Shown in pieces: positions 6,399 to 61,267 of a stretch of 64,000 nt of DNA (position 1 is its first letter; every line of letters starts with the position of its first letter). The DNA lies in NCBI RefSeq assembly GCF_001194135.2, contig NC_068982.1, positions 124,178,368 through 124,242,367 of the forward strand, in the 5' to 3' direction. The DNA comes from Octopus bimaculoides. Lineage: Eukaryota. The notes beneath the pieces are model-generated. The model searched no databases, was not told the DNA's origin, and worked only from the letters and a program-made list of their open reading frames with translations. The position numbers were made by a program, and so were the translations under genes.

Positions 6399-6751
6399 TG
6401 GCACACACATATATGATGGGCTTCTTTCAGTTTCCATCTATCAAATCCATTCACAAGACTTTGGTTGGCCTGTGGCTATAGTAGAAGACACTTGCCCAAA
6501 GTGCTACACAGTGGGACTGAACTTGGAACCATGTGGTTGGTAAGCAAGCTACTTACCACACAGCCTCTCCTGCATATAATAAGCACAAGAATGGATGTGT
6601 GGTTAAGAAGTTTGCTTCTCAGCCATGTACTTTCAAGTTCTGTCCTACTGCATAGCATCTTGAGTGTCTTCTAATATAGCCCCAGGCTGACCAAAGACTT
6701 GTGAGTGGATTTGGTAGATGGAAACTGAAAAAAGCCCATTGTGTGTGTCCA

Positions 6752-6788
<37 letters not shown>

Positions 6789-8050: not shown

Positions 8051-8806
8051 GTAAGTAAGTAATTTTCTAAATTTTATATATTATTAAATGTCTTATGTTA
8101 ATTTATCATAACCTCAGACATCTATAGCTCTTTATTTTCATTTTTTATAATTGTCTGTGTGTGTAGTCCAACCAGCCAGAAAATAGTCCCAAATGTAAAT
8201 ATATCAAAAGGAATAATAAACATCATAGAGATGTGAAACCATGATTATGTGGATATGCTGGCCTCTTAAACAGATACACTTAGAAGAAATATACTTGTGA
8301 CTATCAAGTCACGAGATATTGAAATTTGTTGAAATTTCATAGATATTCATCTCATCCATTCAGTAGTGTCTCAACAAGCCCACATTCAGTTATACATCAG
8401 AATGGTTCAACAAACACTGTGAAAGCAATATATGGAACTGTAAATATAATTACCACTCAAAATACATTAGGAACATGAATTCTGAACTATGTAGCTGTGA
8501 GAGTACTTGTTAAAACAGATGTTTTGGAGCTTTATATATGTATATATATGTGTGTGTGTGTGTGTGCTGCCTAAAAACACATTTTGCAGCATAAATATAT
8601 ATCTTTTGAAATCTTTTGCTTGTTCCAGTCATTTGACTGCGGCTATACTGGAGCATCGCTTTTAGTTGAACAAGGACTTATTCTTTGTGAGCCGAGTACT
8701 CATTCTATCAGTCTCTTTTGCTGAACAACTAAGTTATGGGGTCGTAAACACACCAACATTGGTTGTCAAGTGATGATGGGAGACAAACACAGACACAAAC
8801 ACATGA

Positions 8807-8848
<42 letters not shown>

Positions 8849-9003
8849 ATATATATATATATGATGGGCTTCTTTCAGTTTCCATCTGCCAAATCCACTC
8901 ACAAGGCTTTGGTCAGCTCAAGGCTATAATAGAAAACACTTGCCCAAGGTGCCATGCAGTGGGACTGAACCCAGAACCATGTGGTTAGGAAGCAAGCTTC
9001 TTA

Positions 9004-9393: not shown

Positions 9394-11134
9394 TTACAGT
9401 CACTTCACCAGATATTAGTGTTTGGTCTTAGATATTTATTTGATTTGCCAGCATTCACGGGTGATTAGACCACCAGAGTGTGTCAACAAACACTGTGAAA
9501 GTAATATTCAGAAATGTGTGTTATATAAGAGTATTGTAATTTATTTCAAGCATTGCAATAAATGTAACAGAAATAAAAGTTTAAAGAAATCCCCATGTTA
9601 AATAGAAGAAAATGATTAAAAAGTTTGGAGAATTGTGTTGTTATATGACCTGCCAATAACAACTAATCTAAATTCTTCGATTAATTACTTTCTTCAGTTT
9701 GAAAATGGAATTTTCCCTTGGATATGATGTATAGTGATGTCAATCAATGAAAATAAAGAGAAAAAAATATTGTAATACCTTACATTGGTTGTTTGATGAT
9801 CCCATAATATTTTGGGAAAAATATCTCCTTTTCAAATTGAAGAAAGAAAAAAAATCAAGTATTTTAAAAAATATCTTTTTATCTAGTTATCTAGAATAGC
9901 CTGCTGCATTACAGGTTGGTAGGTGAAATGAACATAACTAATATACAAGAGTCTTCATTTCATAAACATAGCTGACAGTACAGCACAGAATTTGTGCATC
10001 AGGAGGAAGTGGCTATGTGATAAGAAGCTTGCTTCTCAACCACATAGTTCTGTGTTCAGTCCCACTGCATGGCACCCTGGGCAAGTGTCTTCTGCTATAG
10101 CCTCGGGCCAACCAAAACCTTGTGAGTGGATTTAGTAGATGGAAACTGAAAGAAGCCAATCATATATATGTATATATATGTGTATATGTATATATATATG
10201 GGTATATGTTATGTGTCTGTGTTTGACAACTGATGTTGGTGTGGTTACATCCCTGTAACCTAGCAGTTCGGCAAAGAGACTGATAGAATAAGTACTAGGC
10301 TTACAAAGAATAATTCCTGGGGTTGATTTCTTTGACTAAACATGGTGCTCCAGTATGACCGCAGTCAAATTACTGAAATTAGTAAAAGAGTATATGTTTT
10401 ATATTTGTGAAAACAGGCTAAAGAGAATGTTTGAAGAGAGTTTTTTAAGTGAGCACATTTAACTTTAGACAGTTTTTTCTTGGTCTCTGTATCTCTATTT
10501 TTGTAAAAAATATCTCTAAGCTCGAGAAATATTTTACAAGCAAAATAAGAAGGTATATAGCTAATAACCACAGATATAAGTCAAATGAATTTGATGTTGC
10601 ACTTTTAATTAGATTGAATTTTGCTAAATTGCAGATTTAAGTTGCTTGAATATGTAACATTGGTGAAATGTTAGAAAGCTTTTAGAAGTACTTGTAAGAA
10701 AAACCTTGAATGAGTTTGGTAAGGAATTAAGAAAGGAAATGTCAACCAGAAGATGTTTAAGAAATGTGTCTAATCATTGCAGGCTTGAAACATGAATCTC
10801 AAAATGTCAATGATAACAATTAATTGAGCTCCAGGTGCAAAACTGCTCTAAATTGTGAAAGACATGTCATCTAAAGTGAAACTGTTCTTCAAATCAGTTC
10901 TGAAGACCAAAAGAAAAAAAATTAATTCAAAAGAAAATTAAAGTGTTTTTTTAAAAAATTGTTTACGGAAGTAAAAATAATGAAAATTTAAATTTATTTA
11001 CAAGTTTGGTTGATTGAAATTTATAACAATTTTTAAAGATACATTTATCTTTATCAAACAGGGTTATTGTTTAATATTCTGTTTTGTAAATTTGCTCTTA
11101 TTACTTTTATTTCTCATGTTTTTTCTTTAATAAG

Positions 11135-15752: not shown

Positions 15753-15905
15753 GTAAAAAAAGTTGAGCAAGAACTTGCCAATTTGCAACAGCAAGCATTT
15801 CCAACACAAGGCAAGTTTCAACCACTGGCACTACCAGAAGATATGCCTGTTAATAGTTCTGAGTTAATTGCAAGTCTAAACGAACACTTAATTGTCACAT
15901 TAGAG
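15753..15905 (+). CDS. CEP290: CEP290 exon: VKKVEQELANLQQQAFPTQGKFQPLALPEDMPVNSSELIASLNEHLIVTLE
   Basis: ttttgtag / gtaagt, 153 nt; resembles human LPDGIAPSSASIINSQNEYLIHLLQ. Confidence 0.9.
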
Positions 15906-17465
15906 GTAAGTGTTTTATATCGCATACACCTTTTATTTTTACACGAACCCTAAACTCCTGATAGAATTGTAGGGCACTCTCAGAGCATATAGTATAGTTT
16001 GGGCATTTTAAGCTTCATGGAGCTCATCTTTTTCTTCTTTTCAACATAACAAATTTCTGCTAGAGAGAAAGAGAAGAATCAACTCCATTACTTGATTGTC
16101 CTCATCTTCTTGCCCATGTGGAATTTGAAGAAATTGAATACTAATAACCATTATTGAAGTTAACACTTTCTTGCAAATCTGATTAACAGTGTAACTTATG
16201 TAATGTCAACTAAGTCTGATGTTTATATCTTCTTATTCTCTCCCTGGAAAGACATGGAGTTTCAGCTGTTTCCATATTCTTAATCACCATACTAACTATT
16301 CTTATACTAACATCTTCTGCCGAATTTTCTTTAGTCTCATTATCCAATTCATACTGCTTGTCCTTGTAGAAATGAGCTGCGATGTTACTGGTGCCAAGCT
16401 GTATCAGCCTTTGCCTTTCCCTTTCTCTTGTAGTGTGAAAAGGGGAGACTGGTATGTAAGGGTGACTGCTGGTCTTCCATAAACAACCTTGCTTGGACTT
16501 GTGTTTTGGAGGGTAGCTTTCTAAGTGCAATCCCATGGTTATTCATGACTGAAGGGGGTCTTTTACTCTCATGTCATTACAAATAACCTCTCTCCAATGC
16601 AATTCAGGCAAGAATCTTCTACTGTAGCCCCAGGCTGACCAAGCCTTGTGAGTGGATTTAGTAGATGGAAACTGAAAGAAGCCAGTCGTTTATATATGTA
16701 TATCATCATCATTATCATCATTGTTTAACGTCCACTTTTCATGCTAGCATGGGCTGGACGATTTGACTGAGGACTGGTGAACCAGATGGCTGCACCAGGC
16801 AGTTAAAAATGGATGTTAAAAGATGATGATGATAATGATGAACCTCATGCAGCTTCCCAGCTCTTTTCAAACCATGCAATCCATGCCAGTATCAAAAATG
16901 GATGTTAAAAGATGATGATGATAATGATAATGTATATATTATATATATATTTAAGCATAATTACAAGTTGCGCTTACATAAGATTCATTCACATTTAGCT
17001 CCTAGCTTTTCTATATCTTTCTAGATGTTTACCTGAATTTACTAACCACTTATATAAACTGAGGAGTGCACACTTCTTCAAATTTCTTTATATCCAACGA
17101 TGCATCCTGCCCTACTCTTCGAAATGCCTGTGTTAGAATGGGGGCAGCTGATGAAGATGTTCTCTATGTGGCCTGTGTGTTTTCTGTACTCATTTTTCAT
17201 TTTGTCTACGCTTTGTTTGCAATGTCCTGTACCCAGATATGCATCTATATATACAGGTAGATGTAAGTATGTACATACATGTACGTATATATGCATATAC
17301 TCATTTATTATTTGTATTACTATGGATATAGTCTCTGTTTACAATGGTGTATCCATTTTGATGTTCCCTGATGTAACCACCATTAAAATCTTATTTGTGC
17401 CTGTATAAATATACACATATAACATATGTGGATAAACTTATTTTACAGTATTAATTATATTTCAG

Positions 17466-17591
17466 GAGTTGTTTATTCATCAAGAGCAAATAAAACAGAC
17501 TGAGAGCAGTTTGGAATCCTATCACAGAAAATTTGCTGTTGTGAGACATCAACTGGGTCTGCTTTATGCTGACTATATCAAATCAAATCAG
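17466..17591 (+). CDS. CEP290: CEP290 exon: ELFIHQEQIKQTESSLESYHRKFAVVRHQLGLLYADYIKSNQ
   Basis: tttcag / gtaatg, 126 nt; resembles human LEDYNRKFAVIRHQQSLLY. Confidence 0.93.
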
Positions 17592-17806
17592 GTAATGTGG
17601 TACCATTTGATGCAGATATTATCAGATGAATTGAGCACTATCTAAGATAAATTCTTTATATTTAGATCTTAAGAATCACTATTAAAATATAAGGTAGTGA
17701 ACTACTCTAATAATTTTGGTAAAATTTTTCTTTAATGACCAGTTTTATAAACAATATAAATTGGTGGATTTTAAAATAGCCAGATCTATTAATATTTTTC
17801 TATAAC

Positions 17807-18020
17807 AAGGCGGTGAGCTGGCAGAAACGTTAGCACACTGGGTGAAATGCTTAGCAGTATTTCGTTTGTCTCTACGTTCTGAGTTCAAATTCCACCAAGG
17901 TTGACTTTGCCTTTCATCCTTTCAGGGTTGATAAATTAAGTACCAGTTGCATACTGGGGTTGATCTAATCGACTGGCATCCTCCCACCAAATTTCGGGTT
18001 TTCTGCCTAGAGTAGAAAAG
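17807..18020 (+). mobile_element. SINE family A (ggcggcgagctggcagaa head; GACTTTGCCTTTCATCC..GATAAATTAAGTACCAG core)
   Basis: Perfect 16-bp TSD aatatttttctataac (17791-17806, 18021-18036); box-B-like gagttcaaattcc. Confidence 0.9.
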
Positions 18021-19078
18021 AATATTTTTCTATAACTTGTATTGTCACTTATGAAACATCAATACCTTCATAAGATATATATTAACCTAGCATAAAGCTT
18101 CTCCTGCTTTACTATAGTCTCACTCAGTCAAAGAGGATCTTAGTCTTGTGAGTTACATGGTGACCTCACTAGTGCTGGTGCACAAATAAAAGCGTCCAGT
18201 ACACTCTGTAAAGTGGTTGGCATTAGGAAGAACATTCAGTTTTAGAAACCCTGCCAAAGCAGAATTGGATCTTGATGCAATCCTTCAACCTGTTGCATCT
18301 TATTTAACCATTCCATCCTGTGTCAGTATTGGAATATATACATTAGAAGATGGTGATGAGGATTGTATATGAATGACATTATAGTAAAATACATACATAT
18401 TACAGATCCAACAGGAAATGTTTTCCACCAAATCTCTGAAGAGTGACTTAAATTACAAATTTAAATAACAAATTAACCTTCACAAAGGTTAATCAATATA
18501 TAAAAAGAAACAAATTACTGAACTTCTTGAATAATATTATACTTGGGAGTATCACTATATATATATAAAACTAAAAATAATCACAGGTATGATTGTGTAG
18601 TTAAGAAGCTCACTTGGCAACCACATAGTTCTGGGTTCTATTCTGTTGTGTGTGACTTCAGTCAGATGTCATAGCCTTGTGTTGACTAATGCCTTGTGAG
18701 TGAAATTTAGAAGACAAAGCCTGTACTGTGTGTGTGTGTACGTACATACATATGCATGAATTCAAACATGCATGCATACATGTATGTACAGCATGCGCGC
18801 GTGTGTATTTACACGAATGAAAGATGAGAACTGGTATATTCAAACTAAAGTACCCTGCTGTTCGTGTCTGAATGAGTTATCTCCCCTTACTTCAGTTTCT
18901 TCGTTGCATTTTGTACGTAATAAGTATAGGGAAATAAACACCTAACAAGGTATTGGGATCAGTATTATTATGTAGTGAAACTACCTCCCGCCATTAGATA
19001 CAAACTACTATCTCCATTACATACAATCTTCTCATTTAAATATAAATAAATGCGAGCGTAGTAGAGAACCATTCCTTG

Positions 19079-19260
19079 TCCATCACGTGACTGATCATTA
19101 TTCGAATCGGCAACTTCTTCAAACCGTTCCCGCCAGAACGCAAACTGACCAATCACGGCCCCTAGTAAGGTCACGTGATGGAGAATATTTCTACCATCTG
19201 GTGAGCCAATAGTTTGTTATAAATAGCTTTAACTCGGCAGCCAAATTCGTCTCGGTCCAG
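19079..19260 (+). promoter_or_regulatory. Pol II core/proximal promoter inside a CEP290 intron
   Basis: E-boxes ATCACGTGAC (19082-19091) and GTCACGTGAT (19170-19179), CCAAT at 19149 and 19206, TATAAATA at 19218-19225, in a CpG-rich island. Confidence 0.75.
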
Positions 19261-19342
19261 TTTCTCTTTGAGAACTGTTCCGTGTTCCACACGACAGCAG
19301 CAGCAGTTCCAGCGACCACTTCAGCAGCTTCGTCCAGCCACG

Positions 19343-19374
19343 ATGACCTCCGCCGTCGCCACATCAGCAACAAG
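19343..19374 (+). CDS. visible start of a putative nested ORF (MTSAVATSAT...), remainder in gap 19375-19816
   Basis: ATG with A at -3 (ccacgATGa), about 120 nt downstream of the TATA box; product unidentifiable. Confidence 0.45.
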
Positions 19375-19816
19375 NNNNNNNNNNNNNNNNNNNNNNNNNN
19401 NNNNNNNNNNNNNNNNNNNNNNNNNNNNNNNNNNNNNNNNNNNNNNNNNNNNNNNNNNNNNNNNNNNNNNNNNNNNNNNNNNNNNNNNNNNNNNNNNNNN
19501 NNNNNNNNNNNNNNNNNNNNNNNNNNNNNNNNNNNNNNNNNNNNNNNNNNNNNNNNNNNNNNNNNNNNNNNNNNNNNNNNNNNNNNNNNNNNNNNNNNNN
19601 NNNNNNNNNNNNNNNNNNNNNNNNNNNNNNNNNNNNNNNNNNNNNNNNNNNNNNNNNNNNNNNNNNNNNNNNNNNNNNNNNNNNNNNNNNNNNNNNNNNN
19701 NNNNNNNNNNNNNNNNNNNNNNNNNNNNNNNNNNNNNNNNNNNNNNNNNNNNNNNNNNNNNNNNNNNNNNNNNNNNNNNNNNNNNNNNNNNNNNNNNNNN
19801 NNNNNNNNNNNNNNNN
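19375..19816. other. assembly gap; others at 23945-23989, 32240-32366, 45569-45578, 62223-62334
   Basis: Runs of N. Confidence 1.
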
Positions 19817-19942
19817 AATATTTCACATACACACACATGTATCACTCACATACACACTTTTCTTTGTATGACGGCCTGTCTTTGATTATGTTCTTATATG
19901 TCGCATTCACACTCTCACTCAGACATACATCTTTAACGCTAC

Positions 19943-19948
19943 AATAAA
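19943..19948 (+). terminator. candidate polyadenylation signal of the nested transcript
   Basis: AATAAA followed by T/GT-rich sequence, about 130 nt after the gap. Confidence 0.35.
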
Positions 19949-21029
19949 TATCTCTGTTATTCATCTAATACGGTTGTGGTCTTTCATTACTGGTCATCTA
20001 TGTTATCGTCGTATAACATTATGTATATCATCCATTGATATATATATTTGTATGTTCGACCGTGTGACACGTTTAAATAAAAGGAGTCCTGTTTTTCCAT
20101 TCGTCACCATTTCTCCTTTTATGAGTTCGCACGGTCGTTCCTTACAATTATTATGCTCCAGCATGACCTCAGTTTAATGACTGAAACCAGTTGAGGGAGA
20201 AATATATATATAACCTGTCTTTTTCTTCTTCATGTGAGTGAACTATATTCTTGCCAAAATCTTTGTTTACTATAATCTTCTCACACAATGACAAACTATA
20301 AATCATTTAAAGTAAATATCTATCTTCAGTTCATTGAACATCACTTAAAGAAAAATAATTATAAATTCAAAATTCTGAAGGTCTAATTAATTAAGGGCTC
20401 AGTACTTTTACTTGGAGAGCATAAATGAGCAAGCTTCATATAATCTTTGGAGTCCTCATTAAAATATAGCAGTGGCAGAGTATCTTTTTATGTCTTAAAT
20501 TCTCTGTTATGGTATTATCTTATTGTAGAATCTTTTCTGGCTTAAATTAGCTCTCATCATCATTACCATCATTTGGCTTTCACTTTTCCATGTTTGCTTG
20601 GGTTACACAGAATTTGTTCAGACAGATTTCTCTACAGTTGGACGCCCTTTCTGTCACCAACCCTTACCTGTTCCCAAGCAAGGTATTTCCAATGGTCAGA
20701 CATGTTTTTCATGGAAGAATGAAAACAAACAATATCATTTGATGATAGTGATGCTCATTTACAACTATCACATGATATTAAGAGAACACACACATACACA
20801 CATGTATATACATACACACAACTGGGTTCTTTGTTTTCATTTACCAAATTTACTCACTAGGCTTTGGTTGACTTGGGGCTATAATAAAAGACACTTGCCC
20901 AAGATGCTGCATAGTGGGACTGAACCTGAAACTTCTCAACCACACAGCCATACCTCTGTCTTAGTTCTGTTGAAGTTTTATCACTTCACTCACAACTGTT
21001 CATTTGCTTTCACTGTTATTTATTCTTAG

Positions 21030-21122
21030 GAACATGAAGCTGAAGTAACAACGTTGAAAGAAAAAATAAATCAATTAGAAGACTTAAATCAGCAGAACCA
21101 TGTTAAATTGCAGGAATTTGAT
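21030..21122 (+). CDS. CEP290: CEP290 exon: EHEAEVTTLKEKINQLEDLNQQNHVKLQEFD
   Basis: ttcttag / gtaaga, 93 nt. Confidence 0.88.
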
Positions 21123-22482: not shown

Positions 22483-22653
22483 GGCACAGGAGTGGCTGTG
22501 TGGTAAGTAGCTTGCTTACCAGCCACATGGTCTTGCGTTCAGTCCCACTGCGTGGCACCTTGGGCAAGTGTCTTCTACTATAGCCTCAGGCCAACCAAAG
22601 CCTTGTGAGTGGATTTGGTAGACGGAAACTGAAAGAAGCCCATCGTATATATG

Positions 22654-22684
<31 letters not shown>

Positions 22685-22910
22685 ATATGTTTGTGTGTCT
22701 GTGTTTGTCCCCCCAACATCGCTTGACAACCAATGCTGGTGTGTTTATGTCCCCGTAACTTAGCGGTTCGACAAAAGCGACCGATAGAATAAGTACTAGG
22801 CTTACAAAGAATAAGTCCTGGGGTCGATTTGATTCGACTAAAAGCGGTACTCCAGCATGGCCGCAGTCAAATGACTGAAACAAGTAAAAGAAAGAAAGAA
22901 AGAAAAGAAA
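22483..22910 (+). mobile_element. SINE family B, full length, with internal (TA)n(TG)n
   Basis: tRNA-like head gtggctgtgtggtaag...gttcagtcccactgc, CORE-like ccttgggcaagtgtctt block, gaaacaagtaaaaga tail. Confidence 0.9.
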
Positions 22911-23744: not shown

Positions 23745-25020
23745 CTACTTACTCGTGTAGTACTTTTACAAATCTTTTCAAATATATATATATAGTATAT
23801 ATATATATTAGAGGAAAAAGGATAACAATATAATATATACCTGCTAACTTGAAAGCCTAATCCCTAGCTCTAGCCTCAGCCATGAACTTGGAACTTAATA
23901 GATGACCATTTATAGCGCGCGCGTGCACACACACACACACACACNNNNNNNNNNNNNNNNNNNNNNNNNNNNNNNNNNNNNNNNNNNNNCACATTTGTTA
24001 CTACCTTGTTTACCAATAAAAAAAATAGGTATTTAAACGAAAATTTGGTTTTGATCTACACAAGTATTAACATATTGGCCAATGAGTTTTCTGATTTTCT
24101 CCAATAAACTGTTGTAATCTTTTTCCAGTACCTGTTAATAATAAAAGGCATTGAGAAAATGTTTATAAGATTTAATTTTTATTTACATTATACTTTCCTT
24201 ACTCTAAAATACAGAACCTAAAAATGGTGAATGAAAATCCTCATCATCATCATCATTTAACGTCCATTTTCCCTGCTGGCATGGGTTGGATGGTTTGACA
24301 GGAGCTTGCTAGCTAAGGAGCTATCCAGACTCCAATTGTCTGTTGTGGCATGGTTTCTACAGCTGGATGCCCTTCCTAATGCCAAAGCAAAAGAAATACA
24401 AGAAAAAAAATCAAATATCTTCCTTATTAATGTAGAATATTATTTGGAATATAATTATCTTGAGTGTGGGTATTTGAGATATTTGGGCATTGTATAAATA
24501 TGTGAAAAGTTAGTGATTTGTGTTCATGGCCAAGATATTTAACTATTAATGGCTTTAAATATGTTTTGCTCTAAATAGGTACTGTAGAGGGCATAGTTCA
24601 TCATTGTAAGTAGTAAAACTACTGTAGAATTTACAATTACTTTGTTGGGTACCAAATTAAGTTCTATTTGCGGGGAAAAATTTACTTATAATTAAGGACT
24701 AGTAGATTATCTAAGAAAAGATTTACTTCTTATCCATTTAACACTATGGGCATTTAAGCTGAGCACTGACCCTGTCAGTTTATATAGAATTAGCTATCTT
24801 CCTCATCATATCTTGTGTAACTGAACTAGCCTTTGATGGACATGTGAAACTACTGTTTAGATTTTCAAATAGAGCAGTAACTATTCTTAGTAATATTTCT
24901 GTTATATTGTAGCTATTTGGTTGCAATATGACAGAATTGCTACTGTAATTTATCAAACTAGTTATTTTGTAGGTTTAGTCACCAGTTTTTATGTTTAAAA
25001 ATTTTCTTCTCCCTTTTCAG

Positions 25021-27460: not shown

Positions 27461-27686
27461 ATACTCTTTTACTCTTATTGTTTTACTTGTTTCAGTCATT
27501 TGATTGTGGCCATGCTGGAGCACCGCCTTTAGTCGAGCAAATCGACCCCAGGACTTATTCTTTGGAAGCCTAGTATTTATTCTATCGGTCTCCTTTGCCG
27601 AACTGCTAAGTTACGGGGACATAAACACACCAGCATCGGTTGTCAAGCGATGGTTGTTGGGGACAAACACAGACACACAAACACAA

Positions 27687-27721
<35 letters not shown>

Positions 27722-27883
27722 CGACGGGCTTCTTTCCGTTTCCGTCTACCAAATCCACTCACAAGGCTTTGGTCGGCCCGAGGCTATAGTAGAAGACACT
27801 TGCCCAAGGTGCCATGCAGTGGGAATGAACCCAGAACCATGTGGTTGGTAAGCAAGCTACTTACCACACAGCCACTCCTGCGC
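27461..27883 (-). mobile_element. SINE family B, full length; other copies near 6395-6860, 8600-9235, 10005-10390, 42385-42710, 43735-44070, 50185-50712, 59590-59760
   Basis: Reverse complement of the 22483-22910 copy. Confidence 0.9.
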
Positions 27884-29022
27884 TATATTGTATTTAAAAA
27901 AAAATTGTATTATATATTATGACATTTATCAATGCTGTCATCACTAATACTATCACTTCTATTGCTGACAGCAGCAATGTTGTACTACAAGCCAATGAGG
28001 GACTCTCTTTGTAGTTGCTTGACCTGCCAGAAATAGCAAACAAACTTCTCTTTCAGATGCTACGAACTAATTCCATTTTGGCTGTTGTTTTATAGACCCT
28101 TGATTATTTAAGCAAAAATAAATAGAGTATGCAATGCCTACCACTCCAGCATTGCATACCAAGGGCATCCAGCTGTAGAAACCATGCCAAATGAGACTGG
28201 AGTCTGGTGTAACTTTCCAACTTGCCAGTCCTTGTCAAACCATCCAACGCATGCCAGCATGGACAATGGATGTTAAATGATGATGATGATGATTCAACTA
28301 GTGAGAGTCATCATCATTCTCTTCCTCATCATCATTAACCATTTTACTATGATGTGTGAAAGATAGTTGAAAAGTGATTACACTAAAGAAAAACTAGTAA
28401 TAAATAATGATTTCAGATCTGAGATTATTGGATTTTGCAGTGTTAATGGCACAGAACTTGGAATTATTAATAACTGCTGTATTGAAAATTTGTCTAACAT
28501 ATTTCAGGTGCAGGCAAGGTTGTATAGTTTGGAAGTTAGCTTCTGAAACACAAGGATTTGGGTCCAGTCCTACAATGCAGCACTTTGGGCAAATGTCTTC
28601 TACTGTAAACCTGGGCCAAACAATACTTCATGTGTGAATTTAGTAGACAGAAAGCAAATGAATGTCATGTATCTGTGCTTGCTTGCTTGCTTGAGTCGGT
28701 CGGTCGGTCGGTCGGTCGGTCGTCTATCTCTCAATTGAATTGGCTTTTGCTGGCTCTGTACTTTCAAAGATGAGTGGAATAAAATGTCTCTTACTTGGAA
28801 GCATAGTAATGGTTACTAACACAGGAAGGGCATCCAGCTGTAAAATAATGTCTAATAATATAATATTCATTTAACCCATGCACATATGGAATAAATGCAT
28901 TAAAAAAACAAATTAATTTTAGTATGGAAAAAAAAATGTTAAAACAACAAAGCACCAACAATAACAGTAATGATTTTTAATTTAGCGAACTATTTTTTTT
29001 CCTTATTGTTTGTCACCGACAG

Positions 29023-32200: not shown

Positions 32201-32548
32201 TCACCATAGCCTGTACCTATGTATATATATATATATATANNNNNNNNNNNNNNNNNNNNNNNNNNNNNNNNNNNNNNNNNNNNNNNNNNNNNNNNNNNNN
32301 NNNNNNNNNNNNNNNNNNNNNNNNNNNNNNNNNNNNNNNNNNNNNNNNNNNNNNNNNNNNNNNNNNATATATACATATATATAGGTTAGTTGAGTTAGAG
32401 GTTGGAATAACTGTCTGAGGGATAAAAATATCTGTTATACTACCGGTGTAATTATCTATGTTAACCCTGGACATACATATGCAAGCATATTATGCTTATA
32501 GGTTACAGATAATGACAAAGATAAACATGAGTTTATCAGGAATCAAAC

Positions 32549-38803: not shown

Positions 38804-40290
38804 GTATGTGGCTAGAGGTCCACCAAGGATCAGTGCTCAAGCCCCTCTTATTCATCACAGTCCTCCAGGCAATAACAGAGGTATTTAAGACAGGATGCCC
38901 CTGGGAGTTTCTCTTTGCTGATCACCTTGCTCTAATAGCTGAGTCACTATCAGAATTAGAGGAGAAGTTTCAGGTGTGGAAGCAAGGTCTAGAATTGAAG
39001 GGCCTTAGAGTCAACCTAGCAAAAACTAAAGTCTTAATAAGTAGGAAGGCAGACAAACCACAAATCCCTTCAGGTAGATGGTTGTGCTTGATCTGTAGGA
39101 AAGGCATAGGTAGAAACTCCATAAGATGTACCCAGTGTAAGCTGTAGACACATAAGAGGTGCAGCAATATTAAAGGAAGGCTAACTGGGAAGATAGTTTT
39201 TGTGTGTGGCAAATGCTCAGGAGCAATAAACACTGAAAATGTGCAGAAAACAGCTTCTATCACGTTCCAGGGGGAAAAAAACTACATGTAGTTGATAGCT
39301 TCCATTACCTAGGTGACCAAGTCAGTAGCGGGGGTGGATGCTCTGAAAGTGTAGCTGCTAGAATAAGAATAACCTGGGCAATGTTCAGAGACTTCCTACT
39401 TCTGCTGGTGACAAAGAACCTCTCACTCGGAGTAAAAGGTAGACTGTATGACGCATGTGTGCGAACAGCCATGCTACATGGCAGTGAAACATGGGCTGTG
39501 ACTGCTGAGGACATGCGTAAGCTTGCAAGGAATGAAGCCAGTATGCTCCGATGGATGTGTAATGTCAGTGCATATACAACAGAGTGTAAGCACCCTGAGA
39601 GAAAAGTTGGAGATAAGAAGCATCAGTTGTGGTGTGCAAGAGAGACGATTGCGCTGGTATGGTCATGTGTTGTGTATGGATGAGGACAGCTGTGTGAGGA
39701 AGTGTCACATCTTAACAGTAGAGGGAACCTGTGGAAGAGGTAGAACCAGGAAGACCTGGGATGAGGTGGTGAAGCATGACCTTCGAACATTGGGCCTCAC
39801 CGAGGCAATGACAAGTGGCCGAGACCTTTGGAGATATGTTGTGCTTGAGAAGACCTGGCAATCCAAGTGAGGCCGTAACCGTGGCCTATGCTAGTGCAGC
39901 ATAAGCAACCCATTTAAGAGTACCCTTCAATCATTGGGCAATAAACTGCCTGATTGGCACCTGTGCCAGTGGCACATTAAAAGCACCATTTGAGCGTGAT
40001 CGTTGCCAATGCCACCTGACTGGCTCCCGTGCCGGTGGCACGTAAAAAGCACCATTCAAGCGTAGTTGATGCCAGTACCACCTGACTGGCCTTCATGCCG
40101 GTGGCATGTAAAAAGCACCCACTACACTGTTGGAGTGGTTGGCGTTGGGAAGGTCATCGAGCTGTAGAAACTTTGCCAGATTGGATTGGAGTCTGGTACA
40201 GCCTTCTGGCTTGCCAGCCCTCAGTCAAACCGTCCAACCCATGCCAACATGGAAAGCAGATGTTAAATGATGATGATGATGATGATGACA
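38804..40290 (+). mobile_element. 5'-truncated RTE-clade LINE (inactive)
   Basis: VHQGSVL.PLLFI, FLFADHL (decayed YADD), VVDSF.YLGD, AMLHGSETW, RLRWYGHV, GRGRTRKTW; stop at 39145-39147 and frameshifts near 39280 and 39575; 3' UTR with (GAT)n tail. Confidence 0.92.
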
Positions 40291-42184: not shown

Positions 42185-42789
42185 GTGAGTTTTTATCTTT
42201 ACCTTTTAAATTTATTAAAAAATTTCTTAGTTTCTTTTAAAAATATTAATGAAATGGTAGTTTTTAGAACTGAATAGATATCTTAATGAATGGAATTTGA
42301 TACTGCTACAGGATAATGAGTTTCCATAATATTAATAGTATTGCTGAACATCAGTTTCTGTTCACAAGTCAACATATTCTTTTATTTGTTTTTAGTCAAA
42401 CATATTGACCCCAGGACTTATTCTTTGGATGCCTAGTACTTATTCTATCGGTCCCTTTTGCCGAACCACTAAGTTATGGGAACGTAAACACACCAACATC
42501 GGTTGTCAAGCAACATACAAACATGTACATATATGTATACATACAACAGGCTTCTTTCAGTTTCCGTCTACCAAATCCACTCACAAGGCTTTGGTCGGCC
42601 CAATACTATAGTAGAAGACACTTACCTAAGGTGCCACACAGTGAGACTGAATCCGGAACCATGTGGTTCATAAGCAAGCTACTTACCACACAGCCACCCC
42701 TACTCCTATAAACATTTTTAACTAAATCTCATGTAATTTCTGGAAGAGATTTGAAACCATCACCTATGAGTTGTATTACTACTTCTCAA

Positions 42790-43200: not shown

Positions 43201-44366
43201 CTGGAAATGGCACTGGATTGCAAGAATAAGCACTTTATTTTACCATCATTTTATCTACATTACCATTTAATATGTATATTCGATAACCAGTATTATTCAT
43301 TATCAGTTGTAAGGTGGCAAGCTGGCAGAACCAGTAGCATGGTGGATAAAATGCCTAGTGGTATTTGGTCTTTTTTGTTAAAATTAAATCAATTTACAGC
43401 AAGTTTTTAGACTTCAGTCTTTTAGTGTTAGAAAGACTGTTTATATAATAATTTTTGTCAACTGTTGTCATGGTAACAGTTTGTTAAACTCAGAGGTATA
43501 CATCACTCTGAGTATGTATATATGTGAGTGTGTAAGTGAGAGAGAGGTTGATTATGCTTGTGAGTTATGAAAAGTAAAGATATTGCTCAAGAGAAACCTT
43601 CAACTCTGAATTTATACTTTATTGCATTATTCTAGGATTATTTTCAGATATGTATACAAATTTTGGTAACTGTTCACAAACAAATTGTAGAAATATTTTA
43701 AGACAAGCAGACAAACATCATTGTTTTTCCTTATTTTTTATCCTTTACTTGTTTCAGTTACTGGAATGCAGCCATGCTGGGGCACTACTTTGAAGGGTTT
43801 AGTTGAACAAATTAAACCCAGTACTTATTTTTTTAAAGTCTGGCACTTATTCTATGGGTCCCTTTTGCAGAATCACAAATGTTATAAGGACGTAAATACC
43901 CCCCCCCCACTTATATGATGAGCTTCTACACTGTTACTGTTTACCAAATTCTCTCACAAGGCATTAGTCAGTCTGGGGCTATAGTAGAAGATACTTGTCC
44001 AAGGTACTATGCAATGGGGCTGAACCTGAAACAATGTAATTGCAAGCAAACATCTTGATCACATAGCCATTTTACAAAACTTTGCTCATTTAGTTTACAT
44101 GACCATCCCTACTCATCACCTCATGATTTTTCATTATATTAAATCATCATCATCATCATATGTCTGTTTTCTATTAAATGATGATGCTGATGGTGATGAT
44201 GATGATGATTTTATATAATGAACAATCATGTGATGATGTGTAGGGATTGTTATGATGATAGATAATGATTTCTTTTGACTCGGTACACATTCCATTTTTC
44301 CTTTTTGTTATAGAAAGAGTTATAACTGATTAAATCATTATTCTATTGTGTTGTTTTCAATTTCAG

Positions 44367-44480: not shown

Positions 44481-45184
44481 GTGACCCATTTTTCTCTCCT
44501 ATCAGACATGACACCATATATTTACCTGAATTTGTCTTGCTGAAAATTCTAGACATGCCCTTTGTATTTTCAAACTGCAAAATACTCTAAGTAGTGAGCC
44601 TATATCAATTTTCTAAAGGATTAAATAAGTATACAAGGTTTGTAAGAAATAAAGAATACTTTTAAATCCTGAAAATGGCTCAAATTATTATTTGATGGTT
44701 GGTTGATTCTTACTTAGTTTATTCTCCTCATTTTTAGACATGAAAAGTATTTTTACAGTATCTACATCCACGCTGTGATTATATCTGAGTGTCATCAGGT
44801 ATCTTATTCCTGGATGTGTACATAGTCCCAGACAAGATTTGAACTAGGACCCTTTATATCGCAACTAGTGGTAATAATACGATTATAATTTTTCAGAAAG
44901 ATAGACTCATCTTCAGAGATGAAGCATTTTAAAATTTTCACATCTAAACTACACTTTGATCAGGTTGATCTCTTGGATTTGTATATAATGCTGAACTAGA
45001 TCTGAAACAGGAAGCTTTATTTTTAAATGAATGGCAGCATTGCTCTTATCCTGATATCCCCCCATTCCATATGCATGCACACATGTATATCATGACTCAT
45101 ACACTGTTCATCTTCCTGACTTTTGTACATAATTCTGTGTAGTGTACGTAGTTGTAATGTACCTGAGCACTATACACAATAATT

Positions 45185-45231
<47 letters not shown>

Positions 45232-45448
45232 GAGCGTGATCGTTGCCAGCGTCACCGTCCTGGCACTTGTGCTGGTGGCACGTGAAAAGACATTCGAGCG
45301 AGATCGTTGCCAGTACCGCTGGACTGGCTCCTGTGCAGGTGGCACGTAAAATACACCATTTTGAGTGTGGCTGTTGCCAGTACTGCCTGACTAGCCTTCG
45401 TGCCAGTGGCACGTAAAAACACCCACTACACTCTGGGAGTGGTTGGCA

Positions 45449-45497: not shown

Positions 45498-47279
45498 CCA
45501 AATCAGATTGGAGCCTGGTGTAGCCATCTGGTTTACCAGTCCTCAATCAAATCGTCCAACCCATGCTANNNNNNNNNNCAGTCCTCAATCAAATCGTCCA
45601 ACCCATGCTAGCATGGAAAGCGGACGTTAAACAATGATGATGATGATTATTATTATTATTATTAATGATGATGATTATTATTATTATTAATGATGCTGAT
45701 TATTATTATTATTAAAGGCGGCGAGCTGGCAGAATCGTTAGCATGCTGGGCGAAATGCTTAGCGGTATTTTGTCTGCCGCTATGTTCTGAGTTCAAATTC
45801 CGCCGGGGTTGATTTTGCCTTTCATCCTTTCGGAGTTGAGTACTGGAGTTGATGTAATCGACCATCCCCCTCCCCCAAATTTCAGGCCTTGTGCATATAG
45901 TAGAAAAGATTATTGTTATTATTATTATTATTATCCACTTGGCCAGTATGCTGATTGTTTATTTATCAGATTCACAGCGGATAACTGCCATTAGTTTAGA
46001 AATAAAGGTTCAGAAAAATTATAATCGTATTAACTTACTGACATTTAGATAATTAATGTTCCTACCCACTTATTCTAGTGATGAATGTGGACAATAAATA
46101 TTACAGTTCACTACCACTGTCACTGTCATTGCCACCAGCACCAGTACCACCACCAACAGCACCAACACCACCACTGCTACCCTCCCACGGTCACTGCGAC
46201 TTCCCACCCACTGCTAACACCACCACCACCACCACCACCACCACCATCATGGTTTAATACCTGCCCTACCATGTTCAGATCATTCATTGACCTGGAGGTG
46301 AATGAATGCTCTTAGCCAAGAACTGCCCCTGTAGTTATTTCACTACAAAGAGAGAATTTTGTGGTACCTTATCCTGGCACAAAACCAAATTTCATCTCAC
46401 CACCCACCCCATTCCTTCATCTCCCACCCCAACATTTTTATTCATATCTCCACCTCTCACATCCCTTCATCACATCATCACCCACTGACTCCCTACCTTC
46501 CATGTTTCTTCGTCTCACCATCTGCCATGTTTATTTATCTTCTGATCACTCATATTCCTTTCTCTCACCGTGTGTCATGTCCATTCCTCTCATGCAACTC
46601 CCATTACATTCCTCCATTTTATTCAGGGTCTTAGCAGCATTATAGGCCCTGGGGAATTATCAGTGCACAGGGTCCTTATAGTATTTACTTATTGATGGCA
46701 AGACATATCGTACATAGATCAGAATTGAGCCCCTAGACCCATGAGCTGCTATATCTAGACCCACTACCTAGTGTGCCCAAATCTTAAGACAAGATAGCAT
46801 TGATCTTACCATCCATCGTATCTCAGCATCTCACTCCCATAATATTCCTTTATCTTACCGCTTGTCATGTTCCTTCATCTCTCGTCTTCCACAGTCCTTC
46901 AATGTCTGGCACTAACAACAAAAAAATAAGAGATAAAAAACTAGTCAAATGTTTTGTTATGTGAAGCAGGTTTTTACAATTGGATACCTTTCCTATTTTC
47001 AACCACTTTTAACAACAACAACAACAATAATAATAATAATAATAATAATTTCCTACATAGGCACAAGGTTAGAAATTTATTGAGCCTAAGGAAACAATCA
47101 GTCATATCAAACTCAGTATTTAACTGGCACATTATCTTATTGACCTTGGGAAGAAGAGGGGTAAAGTCAACTTTGGAGAAATTAGTACTCAGAATGTAAC
47201 TAAATACCGCAAAACACTTTATCTGACTCATACAGATGTAGATATGATGATGATTTTGTTGTTGATGGTGATGATGATG

Positions 47280-49621: not shown

Positions 49622-50398
49622 GTAATATGTCTTATCTTCAGAATCATTGTTTTGATGTTCACTTCTCCATGTTTGTATGGATCATTTACGAAACTTGTTG
49701 AGGCAAATTTTCTATGGCTCGGTGCTCCTCCTGCTGTCAAACCTCACCTCTTTCTAAGTAAGGTAATGTTTTCCTTAGTCCTTCAAACAACGAACAACTG
49801 AAAGGCTGGATGTGTTTTCACTAAGCCAACTGATGTTGATGTTTTAACCATTTGGTCTATGCTTTCAAAGAGGTCTGGAATCAAAGAAGAAAATCTTTTA
49901 TCACTTGGAAACAAATAAAGGTTCATTACACAGAATAATGTTATTTCCATGAAATTTTTAACATCTGAAAATGCTCTTGCTCAATCCAACATGTTATATG
50001 ATAGAAAAATTACGGGTTATTTTAAAAGATAAAATTGGTTATATGGAAAATAAAATAAAATTAAAATATGTTTACACTCACTGATACACAACAATAATGT
50101 TTCCTTCACATATTGTTGAATATAATAGTTAGTAGAGCAAAATGCCTTGAAGTATTTACAATATATACAGAGAAACATTTCCTTTTCTTTTACTTGTTTC
50201 AGTCATCTGATTGCGGCCATGCTGGAGCACCACCTGTAGCTGAGCAAATTGACCTCAGGACTTATTCTTTGAAAACCTAGTACTTATTCTATTGGTCTCC
50301 TTTGCCGAACCGCTAAGTTTCAGGGACCTAAACACACCAGCATCAGTTGTCAAGTGATGTTGGGGGGACAAACACATGCATATCCATACATATATATT

Positions 50399-50499
50399 TA
50401 TATAGATGTTTTCGATCTAGTTTGGATTCTTTGCCATCAAATTTGAATTCTTTGCAATCGAATTTGATGGCAAAGAATCCAAACTAGATCGAAAACATC

Positions 50500-50505
<6 letters not shown>
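50399..50505. repeat. perfect 45-bp inverted repeat with 17-nt spacer
   Basis: 50399-50443 is the exact reverse complement of 50461-50505. Confidence 0.95.
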
Positions 50506-50542
<37 letters not shown>

Positions 50543-51077
50543 ACACATATATATATATATATATGGCGGGCTTCATTTAGTTTCCGTCTACCAAATCCAC
50601 TTACAAGGCTCTGGTCGGCCCTAGGCTTATAGTAGAAGACACTTTGCCCAAGGTGCCACGCAGTGGGACTGAACCCGGAACCATGTGGTTGGTAAGCAAG
50701 CTACTTACCACACAGACACTTACTGGTCTTGGAGGGCCTGCAAAGGTTATGGGCACTGTTCCTTCCTTCAGATTCAGCAAATTAAGAAATGATATGTATT
50801 TAATATGTAACAGAATAGGATGCAGTGGACATTGTGAATGTAACTTGGTGCTCATTATTCTATCTCTCAATTTTAAGCATGATAATTATCAAGGACATTC
50901 TTAGATAAATGCTCAACTTGATAAGCAAAAGAGAAATACCAACTTCTTATGGTTACTGAAGCTACTTTTGTAACAGATTTCATTTCTTTTTTTTTTTTTT
51001 TGACTAAAAAGAAGTCTATTTGTATATTTCATATAATATTTTCAATACTGTCAGATATTTCTTTGTTTCTCTTTTAG

Positions 51078-54169: not shown

Positions 54170-54217
54170 GTTAGCAACATTGATATTTTTATTGCATTAA
54201 AAACTGAATATAGCTTA

Positions 54218-54720
54218 TCATCATCGTTTAACGTCCGCTTTCCATGCTAGCATGGGTTGGACGATTTGACTGAGGACTGGTGAACCAGAAGGCTACACCA
54301 AGCTCCAATCTGATTTGGCAGAGTTTCTACAGCTGGATGCCCTTTCTAATGCCAACCACTCCGAGAGTGTAGTGGGTGTTTTATGTGCCACCGGCATGAG
54401 GGCCAGTCAGGCGGTACTGGCGACGGCCACGCTCGAAATGGTATATTTTACGTGCCACCTGCACAGGAGCCAGTCCAGCGGCACTGGCAATGATCTTGCT
54501 CAAATGTCTTTTCACGTGCCACTGGCACAAGTGCCAGGAAGGCGATGAACGATCTTGCTCGAATGTCTTTTCACATGCCAGGAAGGCGACGAACGATCTT
54601 GCTCGAATGTCTTTTCACATGCCAGGAAGGCGACGTTGGTAACAATCATGCTGGTGCTATTTACGTGCCACACTGGTACAGGTGCCATCTCGATTTCGCT
54701 TTCGTTTGCCCCAACAGGTC
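54218..54720 (-). mobile_element. RTE 3'-end-derived repeat (family C); other copies near 365-740, 29355-29602, 45232-45650, 26425-26660, 31480-31680
   Basis: Matches the 3' UTR and (GAT)n tail of the LINE at 39950-40290. Confidence 0.88.
54547..54634. repeat. perfect 44-bp tandem duplication inside a family C copy
   Basis: gaacgatcttgctcgaatgtcttttcacatgccaggaaggcgac x2. Confidence 0.95.
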
Positions 54721-61025: not shown

Positions 61026-61262
61026 TAAGTGGTTCTCAACCATTTTTAACCTATGGACCCCTTCAATCCTTATTTTATTTGGGTGGACTCTCACAGCCAT
61101 TCGATGCTTAAAAAAAATCTCATTATATTTTTAGAATTAAGTAGTATTAGGAATTGCATAAAAAAAACTAAATATATTTGGCATATTGAAGAAGTATAAG
61201 CAATTTGGAGCCCCCTATGGTCATATGGACTCCAACTGGGGTCCATATGAAAAGTTGGTTGT
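61026..61262. mobile_element. hAT-type MITE, right end cut by SINE D
   Basis: Left end aagtggttctcaacc; internal ggacccc / ggggtcc. Confidence 0.55.
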
Positions 61263-61267
61263 TGTGT

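What the first reader, a model, noticed from the sequence alone, without database searches (positions are those of the whole stretch)
19040..19960. Hidden transcription unit nested in a CEP290 intron, with its coding part lost in an assembly gap
Seen: two CACGTG E-boxes, two CCAAT boxes and TATAAATA are followed by a pyrimidine/CAG-rich leader and a good-context ATG (MTSAVATSAT...) that runs into a 442-N gap. An AATAAA follows about 130 nt after the gap. About 20 CpGs occur in the 350 bp before the gap and about 13 in the 370 bp after it, whereas the surrounding introns are CpG-poor. Known: CpG retention inside a methylated invertebrate gene body marks an unmethylated promoter. Inference: either a compact same-strand nested gene (roughly 100-150 aa if the gap size is right) or an alternative first exon for an N-terminally truncated CEP290 splicing to exon 21030. 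The product cannot be identified from 10 codons.
Basis: partly seen in the sequence, partly recalled or inferred. Interest (0 to 1): 0.85.

Follow-up and report, generated by a model that had tools for sequence, protein, structure and literature searches.

The report
Promoter-like insert in a CEP290 intron
A short stretch that looks like a gene's on-switch followed by a start codon does sit inside an intron of the cilium gene CEP290. It lies in a piece of foreign DNA that landed inside an old repeat, and an assembly gap hides everything after codon 10, so there is no evidence yet that it is a real hidden gene.

Summary
Two exact GTCACGTGAT E-boxes (inverted), two CCAAT boxes, TATAAATA, a roughly 85-100 nt leader without upstream ATG, and ATG 19343 (MTSAVATSAT) run into the 442-N gap. 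CpG observed/expected is 1.06-1.37 in the patch, 0.04-0.22 in the flanks and 0.27 window-wide. Such a motif cluster arose in 0.25% of simulated windows. The host is a CEP290 homologue on the + strand. The true intron is 17592-21029, between phase-0 exons 17466-17591 and 21030-21122, and no host exon is missing.

New finding: the whole CpG-rich patch is the interior of one old, CpG-decayed SINE. The head is at 18586-18785 and the tail at 20153-20196, flanked by a 12-bp target-site duplication. So the promoter-like DNA arrived by insertion. It is single-copy in the window, unlike nearly every other CpG-rich patch.

The AATAAA is at chance frequency. All three + frames close 18-42 codons after the gap in (CA)n-like sequence.

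The gap could not be closed: no sequence of this species or a close relative was found in any collection searched.

Best reading: an insertion-borne Pol II promoter with a first exon, either transposon-derived or a duplicated gene 5' end. Its activity and product are unknown. An independent nested gene and an in-frame CEP290 short isoform remain possible minority readings.

The parts
17466..17591 (+). CEP290-like exon upstream of the finding (ELFIHQEQIKQTESSLESYHRKFAVVRHQLGLLYADYIKSNQ). It has 126 nt, phase 0 at both ends, and donor GT at 17592.
   Evidence: tblastn of the orthologous exon of locus L002 gives E 2.4e-8. Sequence read. Exon order is collinear with L002.
21030..21122 (+). Next CEP290-like exon (EHEAEVTTLKEKINQLEDLNQQNHVKLQEFD). 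It has 93 nt and phase 0, with acceptor AG at 21028-21029 and donor GT at 21123.
   Evidence: Sequence read. A weak collinear match to L002 ends in IQEFD.
18557..18568 (+). Left copy of the 12-bp target-site duplication ATATATATATAA of the host SINE.
   Evidence: The 12-mer occurs 4 times in the window on both strands (0.07 expected). The two + strand copies flank the SINE head and tail.
18586..18785 (+). Head of an old tRNA-derived SINE, including its microsatellite. Three consensus CpG sites covered by the alignment read TG or CA here, and the head as far as 18740 has no CpG.
   Evidence: nhmmer with an HMM of 7 SINE copies from the window matches model positions 11-228, E 1.5e-19. There are 0 CpG in 18586-18740.
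18786..20152 (+). Interior of the SINE that is not SINE-like: the foreign insert (925 read bases plus 442 N). It coincides with the CpG-rich patch (CpG from 18796 to 20136) and is single-copy in the window.
18964..18972 (+). Left copy of a 9-bp direct repeat ATTATTATG. It may be the insert's own target-site duplication. In that case the insert starts TGTA at 18971 and ends TACA at 20146.
   Evidence: extended by reading. About 3 such repeats are expected by chance in the space searched.
19076..19091 (+). Left arm of the inverted repeat, holding E-box 1 (CACGTG 19084-19089; the 10-mer GTCACGTGAT on the - strand).
19149..19153 (+). CCAAT box 1.
19170..19185 (+). Right arm of the inverted repeat, holding E-box 2 (GTCACGTGAT on the + strand).
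19206..19210 (+). CCAAT box 2.
19218..19225 (+). TATAAATA box.
19243..19260 (+). Predicted transcription start zone, 25-41 nt after the TATA box. Two initiator-like YYANWYY matches lie at 19241-19247 and 19257-19263. This is inferred only.
   Evidence: Read. There are no expression data.
19343..19374 (+). Start codon and 10 codons (MTSAVATSAT) plus AG of codon 11. A at -3, and no upstream ATG in the leader.
19375..19816 (.). Assembly gap of 442 N (estimated length).
19817..20146 (+). Post-gap part of the insert. It begins with (CA)n-like low complexity and has 13 CpG against only 4 GpC. AATAAA lies at 19943-19948. An 8-bp inverted repeat CGACCGTG/CACGGTCG lies at 20057-20064 and 20129-20136. 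All + frames are closed.
20147..20155 (+). Right copy of the 9-bp direct repeat ATTATTATG. It abuts the start of the SINE tail.
20153..20196 (+). 3' tail of the same SINE (model positions 367-410).
   Evidence: nhmmer E 1.4e-7.
20202..20213 (+). Right copy of the SINE target-site duplication ATATATATATAA.

Best explanation
The segment is a real Pol II promoter-type module. It has two MiT/TFE- or USF-type TCACGTGA E-boxes, two NF-Y-type CCAAT boxes and a TATA box, followed by the first roughly 130 nt of a transcript: a leader of about 85-100 nt and then ATG plus 10 codons.

It did not arise in place. It lies in a foreign DNA segment of about 1.2-1.4 kb that inserted into an older, already CpG-decayed SINE within CEP290 intron 17592-21029. 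The insert is most likely a low-copy mobile element remnant (a solo LTR or an internally deleted transposon) or a duplicated 5' end of a gene from elsewhere.

Its CpGs are undecayed either because it is kept unmethylated (an active promoter) or because it is young. If active, it fires on the CEP290 strand. It would then give either short transcripts ending at a cryptic poly(A) site or transcripts that splice into exon 21030.

Shown: the motifs, the CpG contrast, the intron position, and the SINE head, tail and duplication that frame the insert. Inferred: the start site, any activity, the origin of the insert, and the fate of the transcript.
For: - Motif cluster and its rarity: (0.25% of simulated windows).
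- Clean leader and start context.
- CpG o/e is 1.06 and 1.37 in the patch against 0.04-0.22 in the intron flanks. TpG o/e is 0.88 in the core against 1.28-1.29 in the flanks; CpA separates less cleanly (1.20 against 1.20-1.48).
- All but one of the other CpG-rich patches are multi-copy repeats with o/e 0.40-0.77. This patch has no second copy in the window.
- The SINE head (E 1.5e-19) and tail (E 1.4e-7) have the same orientation. They are flanked by a 12-mer that occurs only 4 times in 64 kb.
- Another SINE copy (27475-27885) appears, by eye, to be flanked by a ~10-bp duplication of similar kind; this was not checked with a tool.
- The limits of the CpG patch (18796 and 20136) equal the limits of the non-SINE interior (18786-20152).
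- A 9-bp direct repeat has its right copy exactly abutting the SINE tail.
- No CEP290 exon is missing between 17591 and 21030, so the gap need not hold host coding sequence.
- Literature: octopus gene bodies are methylated while the TSS can stay unmethylated (PMC9476566).
Against: - There are no expression, start-site or methylation data.
- No second copy of the insert was found. That argues against an abundant repeat family, though 64 kb cannot exclude a low-copy one.
- LTR retrotransposons make up under 1% of mollusc genomes (PMC6238403).
- A 7-9 bp flanking repeat is longer than the 4-6 bp usual for LTR elements. The terminal inverted match is only 4 bp (7 of 12), and about 3 such 9-bp direct repeats are expected by chance in the space searched.
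- GC is 43-47%, below the vertebrate CpG-island criterion.
- The insert's left boundary is not fixed; it lies anywhere between 18786 and 18973.
Confidence: 0.5

Rival explanations
1. It is an independent, compact, same-strand nested protein-coding gene. Its promoter is at 19080-19225 and its CDS runs from 19343 into the gap (at most about 158 codons if the gap really is 442 nt), with the 3' end soon after the gap.
For: - Canonical TATA and CCAAT promoter, clean leader and good start context.
- Undepleted CpG and single copy in the window.
- The contig breaks right where a Ser/Thr/Ala-rich, CAG-like low-complexity coding run could begin.
Against: - Only 10 codons are known.
- AATAAA is at chance frequency.
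- The post-gap sequence is low complexity with all frames closed.
- An efficient same-strand poly(A) site inside an intron would also truncate CEP290 pre-mRNA, which is why same-strand nested genes are the rarer kind (general knowledge).
- A host gene with its promoter does not normally land inside a SINE.
Confidence: 0.15
2. It is an alternative first exon of CEP290. Transcription starts near 19250, the exon ends at a donor hidden in the gap and splices to exon 21030. The product is a CEP290 isoform lacking roughly its N-terminal quarter to third (an estimate from recall of the human protein, not measured here), with a short novel N-terminus.
For: - Same strand as the host, and the next acceptor downstream is exon 21030, which starts in phase 0.
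- Any transcript that does not terminate will use host exons.
- Intronic alternative promoters are common in long genes (general knowledge).
- The contig ends in ...ACAAG, a good exon end if GT follows.
Against: - No donor is visible before the gap.
- If the donor lay right at the gap edge, the exon would end in phase 2. It would then read out of frame into 21030 (AG+G AAC ATG AAG CTG AAG TAA) and stop after 6 codons.
- There are no junction data.
Confidence: 0.15
3. It is an inert, young transposon fragment, for example a solo LTR or the two ends of an internally deleted DNA transposon. Its promoter motifs belong to the element. Its CpGs are high only because it has had little time to decay, and it has no present function for the host.
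For: - It lies inside a SINE, and the CpG patch limits equal the insert limits.
- The ends read TGTA...TACA and are flanked by a perfect 7-9 bp repeat.
- Repeat copies in the same gene body still hold 10-22 CpG per 350 bp.
- The arrangement of a TATA box, then an ATG, then an AATAAA downstream fits an element with its own transcription unit.
Against: - CpG o/e of 1.06-1.37 is higher than in any recognisable repeat of the window (0.40-0.77), although the counts are small.
- No second copy in 64 kb.
- The flanking repeat is longer than usual for LTR elements, and the terminal inverted repeat is weak.
- LTR elements are under 1% of the genome (PMC6238403).
Confidence: 0.3
4. It is a chance motif cluster in ordinary intron sequence.
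For: The genome is AT-rich, so TATA-like and AATAAA strings are common.
Against: - The cluster arose in 0.25% of simulated windows.
- The two exact inverted 10-mers are the only copies in 64 kb.
- They coincide with the sharpest CpG and GC anomaly of the window.
Confidence: 0.03

Closest known systems
Intragenic ('orphan') CpG-island promoters and alternative intronic promoters of long genes
   Same: A CpG-undepleted patch with promoter motifs inside a CpG-depleted, presumably methylated gene body, on the host strand. In O. bimaculoides a class of genes has methylated bodies but an unmethylated TSS (PMC9476566).
   Different: There are no methylation, start-site or transcript data here. GC is only 43-47%. 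The patch is an insertion inside a SINE rather than ancestral sequence.
Transposon-borne promoters (solo LTRs such as NF-Y-bound ERV9/LTR12 in humans; ends of internally deleted DNA transposons)
   Same: Foreign DNA nested in another repeat. It has a TATA box plus CCAAT boxes, a downstream AATAAA, TG...CA ends and a flanking direct repeat. It could drive chimeric host transcripts.
   Different: No second copy was seen. The flanking repeat is 7-9 bp rather than 4-6. The terminal inverted match is only 4 bp. No element-encoded protein is visible, and the family is unknown.
Same-strand nested genes in introns
   Same: Position and strand. The promoter and start codon lie wholly inside one host intron.
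   Different: There is no complete ORF, no homologue, and no convincing 3' end.
E-box plus CCAAT promoter modules (USF or MiT/TFE with NF-Y; the CLEAR-type GTCACGTGAC element)
   Same: Two TCACGTGA cores with the flanking T/A that MiT/TFE and USF factors prefer (from general knowledge), interleaved with two CCAAT boxes upstream of a TATA box.
   Different: This is a motif-level resemblance only. No factor binding or target gene is known here.

Membership tests
TATA-type RNA polymerase II promoter | TATA box with an initiator-like site 25-35 nt downstream | tested here: inconclusive
   TATAAATA lies at 19218-19225. YYANWYY matches place the A at 19243 (25 nt from the first T of the TATA box) and at 19259 (41 nt). 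Neither is at the classic 30-31 nt.
TATA-type RNA polymerase II promoter | Proximal elements (CCAAT, E-box) clustered upstream beyond chance | tested here: met
   Two CCAAT and two exact GTCACGTGAT lie within 140 nt upstream of the TATA box. Such a cluster arose in 0.25% of simulated windows.
TATA-type RNA polymerase II promoter | Mapped transcription start (CAGE, 5' RACE or RNA-seq) | not testable with these tools
   No expression data are available. No sequence of this species was found in the collections searched.
Unmethylated CpG island | CpG observed/expected above 0.6 over more than 200 bp | tested here: met
   o/e is 1.06 over 634 bp (18741-19374) and 1.37 over 330 bp (19817-20146).
Unmethylated CpG island | G+C above 50% (vertebrate criterion) | tested here: not met
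   GC is 0.43-0.47 before the gap and 0.35 after it. The window mean is 0.345.
Unmethylated CpG island | CpGs actually unmethylated in the germ line or in tissues | not testable with these tools
   This needs bisulfite data. The core lacks the TpG excess of the flanks (TpG o/e 0.88 against 1.28-1.29; the CpA difference is weaker), which fits either an unmethylated state or youth.
Nested protein-coding gene | Complete open reading frame from start to stop | not testable with these tools
   Only 10 codons precede the gap. All + frames close 18-42 codons after it, in low complexity.
Nested protein-coding gene | Homologues of the product | not testable with these tools
   The query is too short (40 aa minimum). 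The string MTSAVATSAT occurs in no held paper.
Nested protein-coding gene | Own polyadenylation signal beyond chance | tested here: not met
   AATAAA occurs once per 736 nt on this strand, with others at 19045, 20076 and 20883.
Alternative first exon of CEP290 | 5' splice site after the ATG, in a phase compatible with exon 21030 (phase 0) | not testable with these tools
   There is no usable GT in 19343-19374. Any donor would lie in the gap. A donor at the gap edge would be phase 2 and out of frame.
Solo LTR | TG...CA termini with short inverted ends | tested here: inconclusive
   The ends read TGTA (18971) and TACA (20146). Only 4 bp are perfect and 7 of 12 match.
Solo LTR | Target-site duplication of 4-6 bp | tested here: not met
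   The flanking direct repeat is 7 bp with TG..CA ends and 9 bp in all (ATTATTATG).
Solo LTR | Other copies of the same sequence in the genome | tested here: inconclusive
   There are none in the 64-kb window by blastn or nhmmer. The rest of the genome is not available.
tRNA-derived SINE of the window (the host element, not the finding itself) | Head, 3' tail and flanking target-site duplication in one orientation | tested here: met
   Head E 1.5e-19 and tail E 1.4e-7. The 12-bp duplication is confirmed. The central 138 model positions were not recognisable.
CEP290 (host gene) | Exons homologous to and collinear with CEP290 genes that carry the CEP209_CC5 domain | tested here: met
   Hits P0001 and P0004 carry PF16574. 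Eleven exons match P0001 or L002 in order on the + strand.

The most novel reading that the evidence does not exclude
A mobile-element-delivered, unmethylated promoter inside a CEP290 intron drives an in-frame short CEP290 isoform. The isoform lacks the N-terminal quarter to third of the protein (a recalled estimate, not measured) and carries a new MTSAVATSAT... N-terminus. This would be a lineage-specific rewiring of a core ciliary transition-zone gene.
Probability: 0.08. Interest if true: 0.5.

Novelty: new member of a known kind. Interest (0 to 1): 0.27.

Why it matters
If the promoter is active, it would be an example of inserted DNA supplying a new internal start site to a conserved cilium gene in a mosaically methylated invertebrate genome. 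It would also show that islands of undecayed CpG can flag such sites from sequence alone.

As it stands, the practical value is a caution. A promoter-like CpG patch next to an assembly gap can be the interior of a nested repeat insertion. The target-site duplication of the surrounding SINE is what reveals that here.

Tried and rejected
1. Identifying the product by peptide search. The query is below the 40-aa minimum and E-values are capped at 10. An 11-residue match could never be significant. I did not pad the query or spend a database search on it, because searches show no sequence of this species or a close relative in the collection.

2. Closing the gap through other assemblies.
- Exact look-up of 10 ORFs flanking the gap found none in the collection.
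- The best CEP290 relatives (36-56% identity) come from unrelated small-intron eukaryotes (L001-L003). They were useful only for exon order.
- Exact DNA scans of metagenome and viral contigs gave 0 hits.

3. A CEP290 exon hidden in the gap. Rejected: the exon expected from L002 between the two flanking exons is present at 17466-17591, and the protein is continuous across the intron.

4. An RNA gene. Rfam gave only sub-threshold miRNA-like hits on the palindromic microsatellite 18721-18814. No tRNA was found.

5. SINE central region flanking the insert (18810-18970 and 20000-20152). Collinear by eye, but not above random genomic segments. Not claimed.

6. A reverse-oriented SINE fragment just after the gap. 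z = 5.4, but driven by the microsatellite, and nhmmer found nothing. Not claimed.

7. ER-stress, heat-shock and metal-response elements. Looked for by eye and not found.

8. Overlap of the two gap edges. None.

9. Literature search for the peptide string gave 0 papers.

10. A guess that residue 11 starts an Arg- or Ser-rich low-complexity run (protamine-like), which would explain the assembly break. Untestable and not pursued.
Full report
**1. What is in the sequence**

- Two CACGTG sites lie at 19084 and 19172.
- Each is the centre of the exact 10-mer GTCACGTGAT, one on each strand. These are the only exact copies in the window. They extend to 16-nt inverted arms, 94% complementary and 78 nt apart.
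- CCAAT boxes lie at 19149 and 19206.
- TATAAATA lies at 19218, with a second copy at 19041.
- From the TATA box to ATG 19343 there is no other ATG. The ATG has A at -3.
- The frame reads MTSAVATSAT and then AG+N before the 442-N gap.
- AATAAA lies at 19943, 127 nt after the gap.
- CpG counts are 21 in 19025-19374 and 13 in 19817-20186 (observed/expected 1.12 and 1.21). The 700 bp on either side have one CpG each (0.05), and the window mean is 0.27.
- CpGs run from 18741/18796 to 20136 and then stop abruptly.

**2. Is it more than chance?**

- A cluster of two E-boxes, at least two CCAAT boxes and a TATA box arose in 0.25% of 400 first-order Markov simulations of the window.
- The AATAAA is not evidence. 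That hexamer occurs 86 times on the + strand, about once per 736 nt, with others at 19045, 20076 and 20883.
- The CpG count alone is not unique. Ten other 350-bp neighbourhoods reach 10-22 CpG.
- However, all but one of those are multi-copy repeats (14-30 further copies in the window) with observed/expected of only 0.40-0.77. The exception is 61201-61600, which is single-copy with o/e 0.43.
- The finding's patch has observed/expected of 1.06 and 1.37, and no second copy by blastn or nhmmer.
- The core 18971-19374 lacks the TpG excess that marks the flanks (TpG o/e 0.88 against 1.28-1.29). The CpA difference is weaker, 1.20 against 1.20-1.48.

**3. The gap**

Continuity across the gap cannot be shown.
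- If the gap were exactly 442 nt, the ATG frame would continue as NISHTHTCITHIHTFLCMTACL*.
- The other two + frames close after 18 and 42 codons.
- All of this lies in (CA)n-like low complexity that does not look coding.
- The listed ORF 19268-19885 is therefore an artefact of the Ns.
- A single-exon gene would have to stop inside the gap, giving at most about 158 codons at the estimated size.
- There is no usable splice donor between the ATG and the gap.

**4. The host gene and the intron**

- A query made of + strand coiled-coil ORFs finds proteins carrying the CEP209_CC5 domain, PF16574.
- Eleven window exons match P0001, or the CEP290 locus L002 of an unrelated eukaryote, in collinear order.
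- The exon that L002 places between the window exons at 15753-15905 and 21030 is present at 17466-17591 (...YHRKFAVVRHQLGLLYADYIKSNQ, then GT).
- The intron holding the finding is therefore 17592-21029. Both flanking exons are phase 0, and no CEP290 coding sequence is missing, so the gap need not hide a host exon.
- The promoter-like piece is on the same gap-free contig (1-19374) as nine upstream CEP290 exons, so its placement in this intron is sound.
- I believe the organism is an octopod. This rests on my memory of the abundant tRNA-derived SINE with an internal (TA)n(TG)n run, and I could not verify it.

**5. The new point: the patch is an insertion inside a SINE**

- I built an HMM from seven SINE copies of the window. 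It matches the head (model positions 11-228) at 18586-18785 with E 1.5e-19, and the 3' tail (model positions 367-410) at 20153-20196 with E 1.4e-7. Both are in + orientation.
- The 12-mer ATATATATATAA occurs four times in the window on both strands (0.07 expected). Its two + strand copies lie at 18557-18568 and 20202-20213, just outside the head and the tail.
- By eye, another copy of this SINE (27475-27885) seems to be flanked by a ~10-bp duplication of similar kind. This was not checked with a tool.
- So one SINE spans 18569-20201, and about 1.37 kb of non-SINE DNA (925 read bases plus the gap) lies inside it.
- The SINE head is decayed. Three consensus CpG sites covered by the alignment read TG or CA, and the head has no CpG up to 18740.
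- The limits of the CpG-rich patch (18796 and 20136) coincide with the limits of the foreign interior (18786 and 20152).
- A 9-bp direct repeat ATTATTATG (18964-18972 and 20147-20155) has its right copy abutting the SINE tail. It would frame an insert with TGTA...TACA ends.
- About three repeats of that length are expected by chance in the space I searched, so this narrower boundary is only a candidate.
- Attempts to recognise the SINE's central part on either side of the insert, or a reverse SINE after the gap, did not beat controls.

**6. What it most likely is**

- The motif cluster, the leader and the start codon make a convincing Pol II promoter with a first exon.
- Its position inside a duplication-bounded SINE means it was brought there.
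- The usual carriers are mobile elements (a solo LTR, or the two ends of an internally deleted transposon). More rarely the carrier is a duplicated fragment holding another gene's promoter and first exon.
- Base rates do not decide. LTR elements are under 1% of mollusc genomes (PMC6238403). SINEs and LINEs are 11.6% and 12.9% of O. vulgaris (PMC13282606). The flanking repeat is longer than usual for LTR elements.
- The undecayed CpGs mean either protection from methylation or youth. Octopus genes with methylated bodies but an unmethylated TSS are described (PMC9476566). I cannot separate protection from youth without methylation data or an outgroup.
- If active, the promoter fires on the host strand. 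Its transcripts would then end at a cryptic poly(A) site or splice into exon 21030. A donor exactly at the gap edge (…ACAAG|) would be phase 2 and out of frame.

I give these probabilities:
- 0.5 to an insertion-borne promoter of unknown activity and product.
- 0.3 to the narrower reading that it is an inert young transposon fragment.
- 0.15 to an independent compact nested gene.
- 0.15 to an in-frame CEP290 alternative first exon.
- 0.03 to chance.

These readings overlap in part, because they mix origin, activity and product.

**7. What failed**

- The peptide is too short to search.
- Ten ORFs around the gap are absent from the 15-billion-protein collection.
- No close CEP290 relative is in the collection.
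- Exact DNA scans of metagenome and viral contigs found nothing.
- Rfam and tRNA scans found nothing real.
- The peptide string is in no held paper.

**8. Verdict**

There is a promoter-like unit nested in a CEP290 intron, but it sits in inserted DNA inside a SINE. The supposed 3' end is not evidence, and nothing shows a hidden gene. This is a new instance of a known kind of feature, an intragenic and probably insertion-borne promoter, and it is of modest interest until the gap is closed and expression or methylation data are mapped.

Noticed in passing
window 38806-39870 (+), with 39955-40277: A reverse-transcriptase fragment of a LINE-type retrotransposon sits in another CEP290 intron (Pfam RVT_1, E 1.2e-7, for ORF 38806-39147). 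It is followed by a repeat that recurs at 54217-54536 with 83% identity.
   Followed up: partly
window 6409-6787, 8614-9003, 10008-10387, 22484-22892, 27475-27885, 42391-42701, 43744-44069, 50185-50720, 57410-57724 and others: There are at least a dozen copies of one roughly 410-bp tRNA-derived SINE with an internal (TA)n(TG)n microsatellite, in both orientations, 76-90% identical to one another. They account for most CpG-rich spots of the window.
   Followed up: partly
window 61201-61600: This is the only other CpG-enriched patch (10 CpG, GC 0.48-0.50, o/e 0.43) with no second copy in the window. Open frames of 70-81 aa on both strands have no Pfam match. Its nature is unknown.
   Followed up: partly
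window 18721-18814: The palindromic (TG/CA, ATGC) microsatellite of the SINE gives sub-threshold Rfam hits to mir-466, mir-297 and mir-3149 (24-39 bits, against family cut-offs of 75-100). These are low-complexity hairpin artefacts, not miRNA genes.
   Followed up: yes
window 46001-47000: This stretch has the strongest strand asymmetry of the window (GC skew -0.41, GC 0.42). It has C-rich, His/Pro-rich open frames (46085-46645) next to Asn-coding simple repeats (45097-45345, 46954-47199). It looks like simple-sequence DNA.
   Followed up: no
window 17800-18000, 18140-18372 and 16700-16800: Two further repeat families lie in the same intron region: another tRNA-like SINE with several retained CpGs, and a repeat shared with 16700-16800 in reverse. 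The intron is mostly stacked repeats.
   Followed up: no
window 23945-23989, 32240-32366, 45569-45578, 62223-62334: There are four more assembly gaps. Those at 32240 and 62223 are flanked by microsatellites, as the post-gap side of the 19375 gap is. This suggests that simple repeats cause the contig breaks.
   Followed up: no
window 20057-20064 / 20129-20136: An 8-bp CpG-rich inverted repeat CGACCGTG / CACGGTCG (10 of 11 with flanks) lies 64 nt apart near the right end of the insert. The post-gap piece has 13 CpG but only 4 GpC, an odd bias that I cannot explain.
   Followed up: no
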